A DNA stretch of 63,884 nucleotides, counting the filler, from Choristocarpus tenellus KU-1152 (taxonomy: Eukaryota > Protista > Phaeophyceae), in NCBI GenBank assembly GCA_964200185.2. It is 12 parts of 12 records of this genome, joined end to end, with 100 filler letters (N's around TTAATTAATTAA, not from the genome) between each part and the next. Parts side by side here need not be neighbours in the genome. Positions count along the whole stretch, not along the records: positions 6,969 to 13,044 come from CAXNAD020009000.1; 11 more parts are not named here. The stretch is one strand, 5' to 3'. Positions within the stretch are counted from its first letter, which is position 1, and every line of letters begins with the position of its first letter. This document shows positions 6,969 through 13,044 of the stretch, piece by piece. Under the pieces are notes generated by a model. That model ran no database searches and was not told the origin of the DNA. It worked only from the letters and a program-made list of their open reading frames with translations. Both the position numbers and the translations under genes were made by a program.

Positions 6969-7143
6969 CCACCTCGCATGCCCCCATTTCCCCTCCCCCC
7001 AATGCATCCCGGTACTCTCAAGACAACGAACCCTGAGCAACGGAGAGGGAGGTTCCTCGACGAGCTGATCAGAAGATGGATTCGAACACACAAAATGGAA
7101 CATCGAATAGACAGATTCCCCTCCTCCCCTAAACACTCCACAC

Positions 7144-9362
7144 CTGGAACATCTTTCGCGGGCCGTCCATAGCACTGAAGTCGTTGGTCACCTCCAAGAC
7201 GTTAGAGTCCATATCTTTCCTGGCAACGAACCATGGGCCACGATTGACTTGTTGAACATCCAGAAGAGGACCGATACCCTTCCGCTGCCCAATTGTGTGG
7301 AACCAGAGACCACGGTGACTGCCGATCTTCTCACGAGTTCGGTAGTCAATGATCACACCAGGGGACTCTCCCAGGTAGTGCCGCAAAAAGTCATCGAACT
7401 TCAACTTCCCAAGAAAGCAGATTCCCTATACCAACCAACAGAAAGCGTTTAGGAACGAAATGCAGAGAGAACTATCTATAGCAGGCGCTACCGATAGCTG
7501 TCTGCCTACACACTGGAAAAGAAAGGAAGCGGAGGAGTGAAAAGCTGGGAGACACTTGAACCCAGAAATATAGTCTCCCCCCCCCCCCAGTCCCTCAAGG
7601 ACGTCATGCGTGCATGTTTCAAGAAATTCAATTGTACTAGAGTGTCACAACTGACATGGTGGTGATTGAGAACGCAGTACACTGCTGTCACGTTGGAACA
7701 TAAGCACATTATCTACACATCTGAGTTAGTTCCCTTGCCTGTGAGTCCTTTCGTGCCTTGGTTGGCAAGTTGTAGCCCTCAGCAAGGTCTCGTATCTGAG
7801 CTTTGGTGTAGGCACCGATTGGAAACATAGCTTTCCTGAGCTGTTCTTGAGTCAGTGCACAAAGAAAGTAGGTCTGATCCTTCACCTCATCGGGACTGCA
7901 CAATAGTCGCGCCTGTCCAACCCCACCCCCTTCCCCATGAACGCCTGCACCAAGCACCATGCGTGCATAGTGTCCTGTTGCAACTCGGCTAAAGTGCTTT
8001 CCAATCAGGTTGTAAAACATCCCGAACTTTATCCTGCTGTTGCACATAACGTCAGGATTGGGTGTGCGCCCTTCGCGAGCCTCCTTCACCGTGTAAGCCA
8101 CAACGTGGTCCCAATACTCCTTCTGGAGGGGCACCACCTCAAGGGGCACGCCGACCTGCTCACAAACTGCTGTTGCATACATGAGGTCTTCCTCCTGAGT
8201 GGTGTTGGGAACGAGGAGGAAGAAAGTATGCCAAGGGGGTCAGGAGTAGTGCATGGAGTGGGGAAGAATTTTTCGAGTAACTGTCAGCTTCTCACAGTGG
8301 GTGCCAGCCAAAGAGATGCCTCTAGAAAGGTTCGCCGTTCCTGGAGATAAGCCAACTACAATGAGACCACCTAGAGTGTTGGTGCCCCAAAGCTCTCACC
8401 CATGGGCATTCTCCCAAGTGTGCAAGTTCGTCTTCTAGCCATATCTTGAGGTAGAAAGCCCGAGGTCGATAGCCCTGGTCCAATAGTAGTCTCAGGGCCA
8501 CAGACGAGTCTACGCCTCCTGACAGGAGAACTGCCACCTCCTTGTCATCTGTAGGGTTGGGCTGTGCTCCCCAAGAGCGATTCTCGTCACCTTGTATGGC
8601 ATTTTCTCCGTCCACGAGCAACTGTGCGACTTTTGCATTGTGGGATACACCCGAATCGCCAAACTTGGTACGTGAAGTCATCTTCCTTCGAACCTGTTCT
8701 TGGATCACATGTAAGAGATTTCCCAGGCCGTTGATTCTACTTTCTGTAAGACCAGCCCTAAGACCCACAGCATTCGCTAAGATTTTTCCATCGATCCCTA
8801 GGACGGTTGTTGGGCTCTCTCCACTCAGGGTGTTCGCTAACAGTGCCAGGATCCCCCGCGACAAACGGGCATCCGCTGCCCCGCGGACGTTGACTACCTC
8901 CCCCCCCTCCTTATCTGCGGCCGGTTCCACATCGACCGTAACGTAGACTTCAGCCACGCATCCTGGTACCCTGTGCGCGACTGATATTGCGCCTGGAGCA
9001 GGTAAGTCGATTCCTCGGTCACTCCTCGAGAAGACGTCTCCTAGCTGTACCAACAGGGCACTACGATCCCTCAAGTCGGGAGCTTCGCACAAGCGGTCCA
9101 CAGCCTCCTGAAGGCGAAGTGGAAGCGGCAACCCAACCGTAGCATCCGTCTCTCCAAAAGTCCCCCTTAAGCATGACCTCGGCCGTTTGCGTGCAGAGGC
9201 AGCACTAGGTGACTGAGCCTCGAGGTAGCTCACGTAATTTGTGCCTCTTACACAATGTTCTCTCCTATTTGCGCGGGACGAAGAAGTTCCAGAGATTGGA
9301 GGAGCAAAGCTATAGCCCCCTGCAGCCAGGAACGCGGCCATAGCCGCTCGTATTGCAACCAT
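7144..9362 (-). CDS. mnmA: SufE-MnmA fusion: plastid-targeted tRNA-specific 2-thiouridylase with N-terminal SufE domain; exons 9362-8400, 8194-7739, 7425-7144; 3' end cut off by contig end
   Basis: SufE motifs HRVPGCVAEV, ADARLSRGILALL, LTESRINGLGNL. MnmA motifs SGGVDSS, YLKIW..CPW|EEDL, TPNPDVMCN..IKF, ATGHYA, KDQTYFL, KDSQ|GICFLG, TIGQRKG. All junctions are phase 0 and rebuild the motifs. Alternative in-frame ATGs at 9395 and 9497. Confidence 0.92.
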
Positions 9363-9541
9363 CTTCAACCAAGAAAACACTCTGAAAGTCCTCATTACAC
9401 ACAACTCAAGCATGTACCGACCGATGTTTTTGTCGAAGCGCGAACCGTCGGTCGAAGAAACGGTGTGGAGATAGTGTAATATAATTCCATGTCTCATCTC
9501 AAAACAGATCTAGACCTACCAACTATAACAAGGACACCAAA

Positions 9542-12500
9542 ATGCCAATTGCAGAATGTTCTGCAACTAATAATGCGGTCAATAACGCGTCAAGGTGTTT
9601 CGAGCATGAAATGTTCAAGTCGTTCCTACGGGCGCCACCAACAAAATTGGCGATGGTGGATGGCCAATTGTCGACAGCGCACACCTTACGATACCTGCTC
9701 AAGGCCAAGAGGTTAGACCTCATGAGATCTGAATTGAAACCTCAACCTCTCGATGACGCGCTGACCCTAACGAAGGCTCTCTCCCCTAAGTTCGTCACCA
9801 AACCCAACTTGCACAAGACATTTCATTACCACTTGATGCTTCTCTATAAGACAATATGCTTAGTACTACTGTGAAGAAAAGAGTAGAATGGGGTACAACT
9901 TCAAGCAAGGAAACTTTGTTGTGTAGTCCAAAAGAGTCAAAAGTATAATGATACTCTGGCACTTCAACTACACGAGATAATATTGTCAGCTCCCCATCAT
10001 ACGTCTAAGGACAGTATGAGATGGAGGAGGGGATACCACTTGAGGAGAGTCTTTTGGGCTTATCTCAAACGCAGTGAAAAAAAAGTCCGCAAAAGATCGA
10101 TATCAAGCAAATTTCAAAATGCATGAAAAAATAGCCCAAAAGTTCAGATTAATCAACTGTAGCATGACTGATGGTTCTCTGTGGGTTGACAGGCAAGTCA
10201 TATTCAACAAAAAACAATTGTTTATGGTCAAATAAGTGTGAACCAGTTGCTGATCACACAAATCAAAGCTTCAGAGAGTGGCCTGACCTGGCCTTACTAC
10301 GTTGTTACTACTCAATTGTTGTACAGAACACCATTAAGTCGTGCGTGTTCTCACTGAATATAATTCCTCTGGAAACCAACAGATTGGAGGAGGCAGCAAG
10401 TGCGAAGCTTGACCCACCTCTCTCGCAGGAGGTGATAGAGATTCAACGGTTGCAAGGGTCAAATGGACAGTGGCAACCATCAAAACGTCTACACCGTGCA
10501 CTAGGGGGTCATGTCCCAGATCCACCGCTGGGGACAAAGAAGTGGCGCTGGGCAACAGCGCTTGCAGTGGTTTTCCTTCAGCGAAGACCAGAGATATTTG
10601 AATGGGTCTATGAGACATACAGGTGCAAAGGGGGGAAATTATCACAAACACAAATTATACACAAAATATCACAGTCTGCCCCTCATCATGTAAGCTTTCA
10701 ACTTGATCTTCAGGCAGATTGCCCAGAGACCTTGTTACTAGCTAACATCGGCTCTCTGTAAACCTTAACAAATATCTTTCTTTAGGCGAGGGCTTGAGTG
10801 GATGGATAAAGATCTTCTCACCGAAGCTCGCATCCGTTTGCCACCAGATAATCTCTACTATCCTCTGGACACTGACCATGTCAGGGACGGGCAATGGCAA
10901 GAAGGTGTGTCGGAAGCTCTCGCTGAATACGGTTACGCATACTTCAATCAGATTCACCATACTGTTCAAAAAACACAAAGGCTTGAACTAGAGCAGCATT
11001 CAGGCGAAGAAGACAACCTCCAGCCATCTCCACACAGTTTCAGACCTCTTCCCCAATGCTGCGAAGTAAAAGAGACCCATCAGAATGAGCTTGGGGCACT
11101 ACAGGAAGGAACAAGTCGAAAGAAGATACATGGCATCAACCGTGATGGAAACCTGACTGCTGATGAGGAGGAACACGCCCATGGCCTGGGTGTGGAGTTG
11201 CTTCTAGCAACCAGTGAGGTGAAGAGGAGTTTCAGTAGAGGAGACAGGGTAGTTTGTCAGTGGCGTCAGCCTACCCGCCTGGACCACCCACGCATCGATC
11301 TGGCTGCATGGCACCCTGCACGGGTAACAGAGGTGCATAAGGACCACCATTATGTTGATGTTGTCTTTGAATCCGGAGCCTGCGAGCGATTGTCCCGAGT
11401 TCATGTCAAGCACCTCCACCTAGCGCCGCATCCCAACTCAATAAAGCCAATACCTCATGAGGGCGAAGACATTCCTACAGTGGCTCTTTCAAGCAAGAGC
11501 TGTAGGGAGCTCGCTCATATAGCCAAAAAAAATGAAGCAGTTCAGAGGACTTGGAATCAAATTATGCCCATTACTGAGGAATTGAAACGGCTGAGAGGTC
11601 TGTGTATCAAGCACTCTAGGCGCCCCGAGTGGCAGGGAACCTTCCCTGCAGTAAGTTGCAACATGACAAGAAGACTCACAACGAAGAGAAAAAAGAGGAT
11701 AAAATTGAGGAACACACAAACAAAGGAACAACTCCAAAGCCCACTACCACAGGAGAGGAATGTCTGTGACCTTCAAGAGAACACTCTGAACCAATCTATA
11801 CATTTAGGCCGCCAGAGAACAACACCCATAGCAACCATTGTTGAATCCAGTTCAGGTCGAGGAGGTAACATATCCTCAACTGTACATTCAGCACAGATGG
11901 TCTTAATAGCCAGTGTCATGGCATATGAAAAATGTGTCTCTGCTGTTCATGACTGCATCGAGCGAGGGAGAACAGCGTATCATGAAGCTCACACCTATTC
12001 TGAGCAGCACAAGGCTTTCGAGGAGGTGACTGCCAACCTTGGCTTCTACCAGCCTGCAAGAGCAGGGTACAACGACTGGCGAGGCCAACCTGTAATAGGA
12101 CTACAGAATGCAACAGTTGATGCTATTGAGGCTGTTGGGAAATGGGTGGAAGCCCGGTGTGCAGATGCTCAGGGGGGGGGGGGAGGGAGTCATGGGACAA
12201 TGCGCTTCTTCTGGAAAGGACAACACTTTCTGCTTTGCATTATAGATCAGACAGAGCATATCTTCAGTCGGGCCCCAGAGCTTGGGGAATGGTATGGGCC
12301 AGGTTTTCCTATTCATAGAAACCCTTTTTGCCTATCATACAACCTCGACGAGAGGCCTTGCACGCCACGCAATATAATGGTGCGATCCTTTGTCAATGGA
12401 GAGTACACAACAACAATCAGTCCTACCCTACTCATGGAAAGGGAGAGGGAGGAGACTGCACTCAAGGCCATCACAGACAGGCAGGAGGAGGCCCCATCAT

Positions 12501-12634
12501 GGTGGCCAGCAAGGGGGATGGACAAGCAGCACTTTCAAAGGATAAGGTCTGCAGAAAGAATATTGCTGCTGGAGGAGCAATCGATTAATGCTAAGGGCCA
12601 AGAGCCAACACTATGTATGACTGTTCCAAGATGA
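9542..12634 (+). CDS. Uncharacterised multi-domain protein; exons 9542-9789, 10383-10622, 10786-12634
   Basis: GT-AG junctions are phase-consistent (2/2, 2/2); 610-aa open last exon. Contains LQGSNGQW..WATALAVVFL..EW..GLEW (VWA5/PARP4 C-terminal-like), a Tudor/Agenet-like segment (GDRV..W..WHPARVTEV..YVDVVFESG) and a C-terminal FFWKG..EWYG..RNPF block. Confidence 0.75.
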
Positions 12635-13044
12635 TAAAAGTAATTAGATCTACTGGTTGCAGCACTCAAAGCAACAAGAAGCATTTTCCCTAAGAAATCA
12701 ATACAATGTGTCCAGCAAATGACACTCTTGGTCATTGGTGGCCATAAGTGGTCACACCACAGTGACCTGAGGCAAAGATGAGGCAGACAGATACCCCAGC
12801 ACATCATCTCCTCTCGTGGTGTACAAAGGAATATATACATTTAGAGCTCTAGCCTTCAGCTCTGCCCAGGAACTGGTGAAAAAGGGCATTCAAATCTACA
12901 ACATGGCAACTGCTATCGCTCAAGACCCACCAGCTCTGGGTTTGCCTTGCCCAGACCTCCCACTCCGCCCTCGTCCCCCTGTGCTTCCACGGCCATATGA
13001 CGATCGACCATCACCCCGTCCCCCCCTCCCCCCGCGTCCTGTAG

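What the first reader, a model, noticed from the sequence alone, without database searches (positions are those of the whole stretch)
7144..9362. SufE-MnmA fusion: sulfur carrier covalently joined to the plastid tRNA 2-thiouridylase
Seen: one stop-free exon encodes a presequence, a complete SufE domain with its sulfur-acceptor Cys (HRVPGC, codon 8960-8958), a ~47-aa linker and the MnmA SGGVDS loop, so the fusion cannot be a gene-model artefact. Known: SufE accepts persulfide from the cysteine desulfurase SufS. MnmA gets sulfur via IscS/TusABCDE in E. coli or directly from YrvO in B. subtilis. Apicoplast MnmA depends on SufS. The plastid SufE fusions I know are SufE-BolA and SufE-NadA (Arabidopsis SufE1/SufE3). 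Inference: a Rosetta-stone SufS -> fused SufE -> MnmA relay for s2U34 synthesis in stramenopile plastids. I do not know of this architecture being described.
Basis: partly seen in the sequence, partly recalled or inferred. Interest (0 to 1): 0.92.

Follow-up and report, generated by a model that had tools for sequence, protein, structure and literature searches.

The report
SufE–MnmA fusion gene, brown alga
This is a real, expressed brown-algal gene that joins a sulfur-carrier domain (SufE) to the plastid tRNA-thiolating enzyme MnmA, but the same fusion and the same sulfur-relay idea are already published for dinoflagellates, Toxoplasma and Plasmodium, so it is a new member of a known family.

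Summary
The piece is a 6,076-bp contig of the brown alga Choristocarpus tenellus. One stop-free minus-strand exon (9362-8400) encodes a signal-peptide-like leader, a Pfam SufE domain with its acceptor Cys (codon 8960-8958), a linker of about 52 aa and the MnmA PP-loop. Exons 2 (8194-7739) and 3 (7425-7144) continue MnmA, and the C-terminal domain lies off the contig.

One RNA-like assembled contig runs from SufE across the spliced intron 1 into exon 2, so the fusion is transcribed as one mRNA.

The fusion is not specific to stramenopiles. I found it in red algae, cryptophytes, haptophytes, diatoms, a xanthophyte, chromerids and coccidians. All fused MnmA domains form one clade. The SufE Cys is present in 291 of 291 sequences that cover it.

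The novelty claim fails. Corel et al. 2016 (dinophytes), Yang et al. 2022 (Toxoplasma) and Swift et al. 2023 (Plasmodium and other apicomplexans) already describe the architecture, and two of them propose the SufS to SufE to MnmA relay. That relay is still untested biochemically.

New here:
- the width of the distribution;
- a corrected gene model with a GC-AG intron;
- several reference annotations (Guillardia, Tribonema, old Ectocarpus) that split or truncate the gene.

The parts
9309..9362 (-). Start codon (9362-9360) and signal-peptide-like N-terminus of 18 aa ending ...GGYS, followed by F at +1 (FAPP)
   Evidence: Sequence. The same motif is at the N-terminus of the Discosporangium, Ectocarpus, Cladosiphon and Ascophyllum orthologues. 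The start is inferred and is not covered by an RNA contig.
9126..9308 (-). Transit-peptide-like stretch, rich in Ser/Thr/Arg and poorly conserved
   Evidence: 10-32% identity within brown algae and not alignable outside them
8697..9089 (-). SufE domain (PF02657)
   Evidence: 62.1 bits, E 5.5e-17. It aligns to E. coli CsdE structures with the GC motif in register. It is 28-63% identical to orthologues.
8958..8960 (-). Codon of the persulfide-acceptor Cys (HRVPGC)
   Evidence: Cys in 217/217 plus 74/74 fusion proteins that cover the column
8541..8696 (-). Interdomain linker of about 52 aa
   Evidence: 13-32% identity. Its length varies from 6 to 166 aa among orthologues, median 32.
8400..8540 (-). 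Start of the MnmA HUP (PP-loop ATPase) domain, with SGGVDS at 8522-8505. Exon 1 ends ...GECPW.
   Evidence: PF03054 positions 2-52; 71-96% identity to orthologues
8195..8399 (-). Intron 1, 205 nt, GT-AG
   Evidence: Spliced out in X3 record 10. Tribonema has an intron at the same position.
7739..8194 (-). Exon 2: the rest of the HUP domain. Asp codon 8053-8051 and Cys codon 8044-8042 (NPDVMCN) match the E. coli D99/C102 motif.
   Evidence: PF03054 positions 55-195, E 4.7e-46; translation; aligned to solved MnmA
7426..7738 (-). Intron 2, 313 nt, GC-AG; also found retained
   Evidence: X3 record 9 joins 7424/7738 with 3 nt of slack. X3 record 8 (7398-7767) keeps the intron. The deposited model P0001 reads into it and stops.
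7144..7425 (-). Exon 3: GICFLGK with the second catalytic Cys (codon 7419-7417, E. coli C199 motif) and the PRC-barrel domain
   Evidence: PF20259, E 1.5e-20; translation
6969..7143 (-). Start of intron 3. The remaining exons (C-terminal beta-barrel domain, 3' UTR) lie beyond the piece's edge.
   Evidence: X3 record 7 (2473 nt) ends on 7142-7427 and carries 2187 further nt that do not lie on the piece. Orthologues have PF20258.

Best explanation
This is a nuclear gene of the brown alga Choristocarpus tenellus for a plastid-targeted two-module enzyme.

Shown: a leader, a SufE domain with its acceptor Cys, a variable tether and a D-type MnmA (PP-loop, the Asp-x-x-Cys motif and the second Cys) are encoded and transcribed as one unit. 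The arrangement is conserved, with an invariant SufE Cys, across red algae and the named red-plastid lineages.

Inferred: the plastid cysteine desulfurase SufS loads a persulfide on the SufE-domain Cys. The tether lets that domain swing to the MnmA active site and pass the sulfur to the Cys at the start of exon 3 (the E. coli C199 equivalent). MnmA then uses ATP to adenylate C2 of U34 in plastid tRNA-Lys, tRNA-Glu and tRNA-Gln and replaces the oxygen with sulfur. On this reading the fused SufE does the job that TusA/BCD/E do in E. coli, and it gives tRNA thiolation its own tap on SufS, separate from Fe-S assembly.
For: One ORF holds both domains.

One spliced RNA-like contig spans SufE to exon 2.

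The acceptor Cys is present in 291/291 orthologues that cover it, including the coccidians.

SufE is 28-63% conserved and the start of MnmA 71-96%, against 13-32% for the linker. Linker length ranges from 6 to 166 aa.

The MnmA catalytic motifs are intact.

The brown-algal N-termini share a signal peptide followed by F at +1.

In P. falciparum, SufS and MnmA are needed for apicoplast maintenance but the stand-alone SufE is not, and the authors propose the same relay.

None of the 80 closest bacterial mnmA loci has a SufE-like ORF within 3 kb, so the coupling looks like a eukaryotic invention that selection has kept.
Against: No biochemical test of the relay exists for any member.

SufE-less B. 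subtilis MnmA could replace PfMnmA, in one of four attempts, so a fused SufE is not strictly required for SufS-dependent thiolation.

D-type MnmA may use a [4Fe-4S] cluster rather than a Cys persulfide.

The 5' end and start codon are not covered by RNA contigs.

Targeting is inferred from sequence only.

Confidence: 0.6

Rival explanations
1. The SufE domain serves a cluster rather than a persulfide relay. It recruits SufS to build or repair a labile [4Fe-4S] cluster on the MnmA domain's Asp/Cys/Cys site, as proposed for the SufE domain of Arabidopsis SufE3 (SufE-NadA), and that cluster carries the sulfur for U34.
For: In AtSufE3 the SufE domain is required for NadA activity and is held to reconstitute its 4Fe-4S cluster through NFS2. 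A recent review reports that E. coli D-type MnmA can bind an Fe-S cluster with 2 Cys + 1 Asp. The window's MnmA has exactly that D-x-x-C...C set.
Against: In P. falciparum, deleting SufC, SufD or SufE abolishes Fe-S supply but leaves the apicoplast intact, whereas losing MnmA or SufS does not. This argues that MnmA there does not depend on the SUF scaffold. In-situ assembly by SufS plus the fused SufE alone is not excluded.
Confidence: 0.2
2. The SufE domain is mainly a docking and activating module. It binds SufS and stimulates it, keeping it next to MnmA, while the sulfur passes directly from the SufS persulfide to the MnmA Cys as in B. subtilis YrvO-MnmA.
For: SufE proteins stimulate SufS, about 17-fold for the P. 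falciparum pair as cited. Swift et al. judge that direct SufS-to-MnmA transfer is most similar to what they observe. BsMnmA without SufE could complement.
Against: The acceptor Cys is invariant in 291/291 sequences, although stimulation of SufS by SufE normally also goes through that Cys.
Confidence: 0.12
3. The fusion is an assembly or gene-model artefact, or the SufE part is not translated because the transcript starts downstream or the part is spliced out.
For: The main RNA contig ends at 9272, 90 nt short of the ATG. A minor joint (depth 2.8 against 157, with 24 nt on the shorter side) links 9685 to exon 2 and skips exon 1.
Against: Both domains share one stop-free exon and one RNA contig. 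There is no in-frame ATG between 9272 and the SufE domain. The skipping isoform would also lose the PP-loop. In-frame conservation holds in about 300 orthologues, including the intronless 670-aa Guillardia ORF.
Confidence: 0.02
4. The protein is mitochondrial or dual-targeted rather than plastid-specific.
For: No localisation predictor or experiment was available here. AtSufE1 is dual-targeted.
Against: The hydrophobic N-terminus followed by F at +1 is the ochrophyte plastid-import signature (own knowledge) and is shared by five brown-algal orthologues. The apicomplexan members were localised to the apicoplast.
Confidence: 0.05

Closest known systems
Apicoplast MnmA of Toxoplasma gondii (TGGT1_309110) and Plasmodium falciparum (Yang 2022, PMC9420914; Swift 2023, PMC10219651)
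   Same: Same domain order, with SufE or a SufE-like domain N-terminal to MnmA. Same family: the coccidian homologues Besnoitia and Neospora are recovered by the profile of the window's segment, with Pfam SufE and the Cys. Same proposed relay from SufS.
   Different: The apicomplexan proteins are 1000-1600 aa with long low-complexity inserts and a weak SufE signal, about 31 bits in the coccidians scanned here. The algal protein is compact and canonical (62 bits). The algal one sits in a photosynthetic plastid and has an ochrophyte-type leader.
[quoted passage not shown] 2016, PMC4766943)
   Same: The same two domains in a nuclear gene of a plastid-bearing eukaryote, with the same suggestion that SufE supplies the sulfur.
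   Different: It was reported for dinophytes only, as a preliminary example without residues, gene structure or expression. Here the distribution extends to red algae, cryptophytes, haptophytes, ochrophytes, chromerids and coccidians.
Arabidopsis SufE3 (SufE-NadA) and SufE1 (SufE-BolA)
   Same: A plastid SufE domain fused N-terminally to a client or regulator domain. In SufE3 the SufE domain is needed for the partner's activity.
   Different: The partner is different. In SufE3 the sulfur goes into a 4Fe-4S cluster and not, as far as is known, into a substrate.
E. coli IscS-TusA-TusBCD-TusE-MnmA relay and B. subtilis YrvO-MnmA pair
   Same: The end enzyme is a D-type MnmA with the same catalytic motifs. 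The sulfur comes from a cysteine desulfurase persulfide.
   Different: There are no Tus proteins. The carrier is of the SufE family and is covalently tethered, and the desulfurase is presumably the type II SufS rather than IscS or a dedicated YrvO. None of the 80 closest bacterial mnmA loci has a SufE-like neighbour.
E. coli CsdA-CsdE-TcdA
   Same: A SufE-family acceptor (CsdE is the best PDB match of the window's domain) works with a tRNA-modifying enzyme (own knowledge).
   Different: These are separate proteins, and TcdA makes ct6A37, not s2U34.

Membership tests
SufE family (Pfam PF02657) | Score above Pfam's gathering cut-off | tested here: met
   62.1 bits against 27, profile positions 5-120 of 121
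SufE family (Pfam PF02657) | Persulfide-acceptor Cys in the conserved G-C loop | tested here: met
   HRVPGC at 8975-8958. The GC aligns with the GC of E. coli CsdE. Cys is present in 291/291 orthologues.
SufE family (Pfam PF02657) | Equivalog of bacterial SufE or CsdE (NCBIfam cut-offs) | tested here: not met
   26.6 bits against 160 (SufE) and 29.2 against 136.4 (CsdE). It is a family member, not an equivalog of either bacterial protein.
SufE family (Pfam PF02657) | Accepts sulfur from SufS and stimulates it | not testable with these tools
   Needs biochemistry
MnmA / tRNA 2-thiouridine(34) synthase | HUP domain with the PP-loop SGGxDS | tested here: met
   PF03054 in exon 1 (36.4 bits) and exon 2 (157.4 bits); SGGVDS at 8522-8505
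MnmA / tRNA 2-thiouridine(34) synthase | Catalytic D-x-x-C and second Cys (E. coli D99/C102/C199 motifs, D-type) | tested here: met
   NPDVMCN in exon 2 and KDSQ|GICF across intron 2. Exon 2 aligns to solved MnmA chains including 2DER, E 2e-33 to 5.5e-29.
MnmA / tRNA 2-thiouridine(34) synthase | PRC-barrel middle domain and C-terminal beta-barrel | tested here: inconclusive
   The middle domain is present (72.9 bits). The C-terminal domain lies off the piece and is present in the orthologues P0127 and P0033.
MnmA / tRNA 2-thiouridine(34) synthase | NCBIfam equivalog score for the whole protein | tested here: inconclusive
   The exons were scored apart (36.5, 147.3 and 70.4 bits against a cut-off of 236.95). 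By instruction they were not joined.
SufE-MnmA fusion family of red-lineage plastids | SufE N-terminal to MnmA in one polypeptide, with the MnmA part inside the clade of fused proteins | tested here: met
   for the window. The brown-algal orthologues sit in the fused clade with support 99. The window's own MnmA part was not in the tree because its exons were not joined.
Ochrophyte plastid-targeted proteins | ER signal peptide followed by a transit peptide with an aromatic residue (F) at +1 | tested here: inconclusive
   The motif is seen by eye and is shared by five brown algae. No predictor was run and there is no localisation experiment.

The most novel reading that the evidence does not exclude
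The fusion arose once, in or before the red-algal ancestor, and travelled with the red plastid into cryptophytes, haptophytes, ochrophytes and myzozoans. In all of them it is the obligatory, dedicated branch that partitions SufS sulfur between tRNA thiolation (fused SufE) and Fe-S assembly (free SufE). The compact algal proteins would then be the tractable model for the essential apicoplast enzyme that could not be expressed.
Probability: 0.4. Interest if true: 0.45.

Novelty: new member of a known kind. Interest (0 to 1): 0.3.

Why it matters
How plastid MnmA obtains sulfur has been addressed genetically only in Plasmodium. There the enzyme could not be expressed for biochemistry, because the gene is AT-rich and low-complexity.

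The algal orthologues are compact and canonical, and in Guillardia the gene is intronless. They offer a direct in vitro test of a tethered SufE-to-MnmA relay. They also offer a test of the current dispute over whether D-type MnmA works through a Cys persulfide or an Fe-S cluster.

The invariant Cys across about 300 sequences, and the single clade, suggest an old, selected solution shared by all red-lineage plastids, including an essential apicoplast enzyme.

In practice, several reference annotations split or truncate this gene, which hides the architecture from domain censuses.

Tried and rejected
It gives no evidence either way.
- The homologue search with the SufE domain alone found only the Tribonema fragment, because of the word-index limit. 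The origin of the SufE module (cyanobacterial according to Corel 2016) could therefore not be tested.
- The bacterial scan is pattern-limited. The closest hits are about 50% identical and come from Latescibacterota, KSB1, Patescibacteria, Bdellovibrionota, Acidobacteriota and others, with no cyanobacterium in the top 80. This neither confirms nor refutes a proteobacterial origin of the MnmA part.
- The mixture-model ML tree did not finish, so FastTree was used. The tree has no cyanobacterial, plant or mitochondrial MnmA.
- Méheust et al. 2016 (PNAS), which may list this fusion, is not held.
- Artefact and untranslated-SufE readings were rejected (see the rivals).
- Green algae, plants and glaucophytes: no named hit turned up. 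By Swift et al.'s alignment, PfMnmA's 421-aa N-terminal extension has no counterpart in the Arabidopsis orthologue. This was not tested systematically.
- The spliced exons were never joined. Every search was done exon by exon, by reference.

Full report
**What is there**

The piece 6969-13044 is a whole 6,076-bp contig of the brown alga Choristocarpus tenellus. The deposited partial protein P0001 matches at 100% and comes from a contig of that length. A DNA run holds the stretch in one piece.

On the minus strand, ORF 8322..9497 is stop-free. Pfam finds in it a SufE domain (62.1 bits against a cut-off of 27; nt 9089-8697) and, 52 residues further on, the start of the MnmA HUP domain.

- The ORFs at 7709..8182 and 7129..7404 continue MnmA: HUP domain profile positions 55-195 (E 4.7e-46) and the PRC-barrel domain (E 1.5e-20).

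**Gene model and expression**

Three runs of one study hold the stretch. X1 is DNA-like. X3 behaves as RNA, because its contigs skip introns with canonical ends.

- X3 record 10 (1330 nt) covers 9272-8399 joined to 8193-7738. SufE, linker, PP-loop and exon 2 are therefore on one spliced molecule.
- Read with the stated slack, intron 1 is 8399-8195 (GT-AG).
- Intron 2 is 7738-7426. It has a GC donor right after ...KDSQ and an acceptor right before GICFLGK.
- Exon 3 ends at 7144. A 2473-nt RNA contig carries 2187 further nt that are not on the piece, so the C-terminal domain and the 3' UTR lie beyond the edge.
- The deposited model P0001 misses the GC-AG intron and ends inside it.
- No RNA contig covers 9273-9517, so the start codon is inferred.
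- ATG 9362 gives an 18-residue hydrophobic N-terminus followed by F at +1. The Discosporangium orthologue starts with nearly the same sequence, and Ectocarpus, Cladosiphon and Ascophyllum share the signal-plus-F motif. That motif is the ochrophyte plastid-import signature (own knowledge).
- I searched the exons apart, by reference, and did not join them.

**Residues**

The SufE domain aligns to E. coli CsdE structures with the G-C loop in register.

The MnmA part is D-type. It has NPDVMCN (Asp 8053-8051, Cys 8044-8042) and the second Cys at 7419-7417, and exon 2 aligns to solved MnmA chains at E 2e-33.

**Distribution**

- The exon-1 query found well over 100 proteins with both Pfam domains. 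They come from brown algae, diatoms, Vitrella and the red algae Rhodosorus, Gracilaria and Purpureofilum, and they include complete MMETSP transcripts.
- Querying with the MnmA part alone of Vitrella P0033 still returned almost only fused proteins, and it added Prymnesium, Pseudo-nitzschia, Discosporangium and Cladosiphon.
- Entries that look unfused are annotation artefacts:
  - Tribonema has one ORF with a leader, SufE and the PP-loop that ends at the same GECPW|gt intron site.
  - Guillardia has one uninterrupted 670-aa ORF that was annotated as an 81-aa model plus a 431-aa model.
  - The old Ectocarpus model sits next to a fused Ectocarpus protein in the tree.
- An exhaustive profile search found 107 clusters (50% identity) at E<=1e-30. 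They include Chromera, Besnoitia and Neospora, with Pfam SufE.
- In a FastTree of MnmA domains, all fused proteins and their truncated twins form one clade (SH-like 99), with the red algae as a subclade (98). Five truly short unfused proteins fall with the bacteria. The tree lacks cyanobacterial, plant and mitochondrial sequences.
- None of the 80 closest bacterial mnmA loci has a SufE-like ORF within 3 kb.

**Constraint**

- The acceptor Cys is present in 217/217 and 74/74 sequences that cover it. The remaining sequences are truncated.
- Against ten orthologues, the SufE domain is 28-63% identical, the start of MnmA 71-96% and the linker 13-32%.
- Linker length ranges from 6 to 166 aa.
- This is the pattern expected of two working modules on a flexible tether.

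**Mechanism**

The best reading is a tethered persulfide relay from SufS to the SufE Cys to the MnmA Cys, and then to ATP-activated U34.

Indirect support comes from P. falciparum. There SufS and MnmA are needed for apicoplast maintenance, but the free SufE and SufC/D are not.

Against strict necessity, B. subtilis MnmA without SufE could complement.

Two rivals remain. One is in-situ building of a 4Fe-4S cluster on the Asp/Cys/Cys site, by analogy with AtSufE3-NadA. The other is a pure docking and activation role.

**Novelty**

The fusion is published.

- Corel et al. 2016 describe it in dinophytes and suggest that SufE supplies the sulfur.
- Yang et al. 2022 report a Pfam SufE domain in TgMnmA.
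- Swift et al. 2023 report a SufE-like domain in five apicomplexan MnmAs and propose the relay.
- No later paper tests it.

This locus is therefore a new, canonical member of a known family. The added value is the pan-red-lineage distribution, the invariant Cys, the corrected gene model and the mis-split reference annotations.

Noticed in passing
window 9363-9711 and 10383 onward (+ strand): A divergent neighbouring gene: ATG 9542, exon to 9711, GT donor, spliced in frame to 10383 (...LKAKR|LEEAASAKLD...). The two start codons are 179 bp apart, which suggests a compact bidirectional promoter and explains the RNA gap over 9273-9517.
   Followed up: partly
window 7426-7738: The GC-AG intron 2 is also present unspliced in an RNA-like contig (7398-7767, depth 51 against 108 for the spliced joint), whereas intron 1 shows no unspliced contig. 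Retention would give the truncated product that the deposited model P0001 encodes.
   Followed up: partly
window 9685 joined to 8194 (- strand): A minor joint (depth 2.8, 24 nt on the shorter side) links an upstream minus-strand segment (9685-9860) to exon 2 and skips all of exon 1, PP-loop included. It is probably splicing noise or an antisense transcript.
   Followed up: no
window 10171-10761 and 10802-12634 (+ strand): Two long ORFs (196 and 610 aa) have no Pfam match. The 610-aa ORF also has no relative in viral contigs and no usable Atlas hit. They are probably exons of the divergent neighbour, and their function is unknown.
   Followed up: partly
L083 3284-5296 (Guillardia theta); L002 5599-6600 (Tribonema minus): Reference annotations split the fusion into a small 'SufE' model and an 'MnmA' model (6 bp and 105 bp apart). 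The DNA shows one continuous ORF or exon. The old Ectocarpus siliculosus model (478 aa) likewise lacks the SufE part.
   Followed up: yes
P0353 (Polarella glacialis, 547 aa): A dinoflagellate model joins a strong SufE domain (115.7 bits, Cys present) to a cysteinyl-tRNA synthetase catalytic domain. This could be another SufE fusion or a merged gene model.
   Followed up: partly
P0276 (Chromera velia, 1265 aa); P0270 (1147 aa): Some members carry extra domains: an NAD_binding_8 tail in Chromera and an N-terminal SET domain in P0270. These may be merged gene models.
   Followed up: no
L001 439-2647 (GCA_024449935.1): In this divergent clade (P0035, P0041, P0048, P0062) the first half of the SufE domain lies in a separate upstream ORF, so the called 549-aa protein is N-terminally truncated. 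The organism could not be named.
   Followed up: partly
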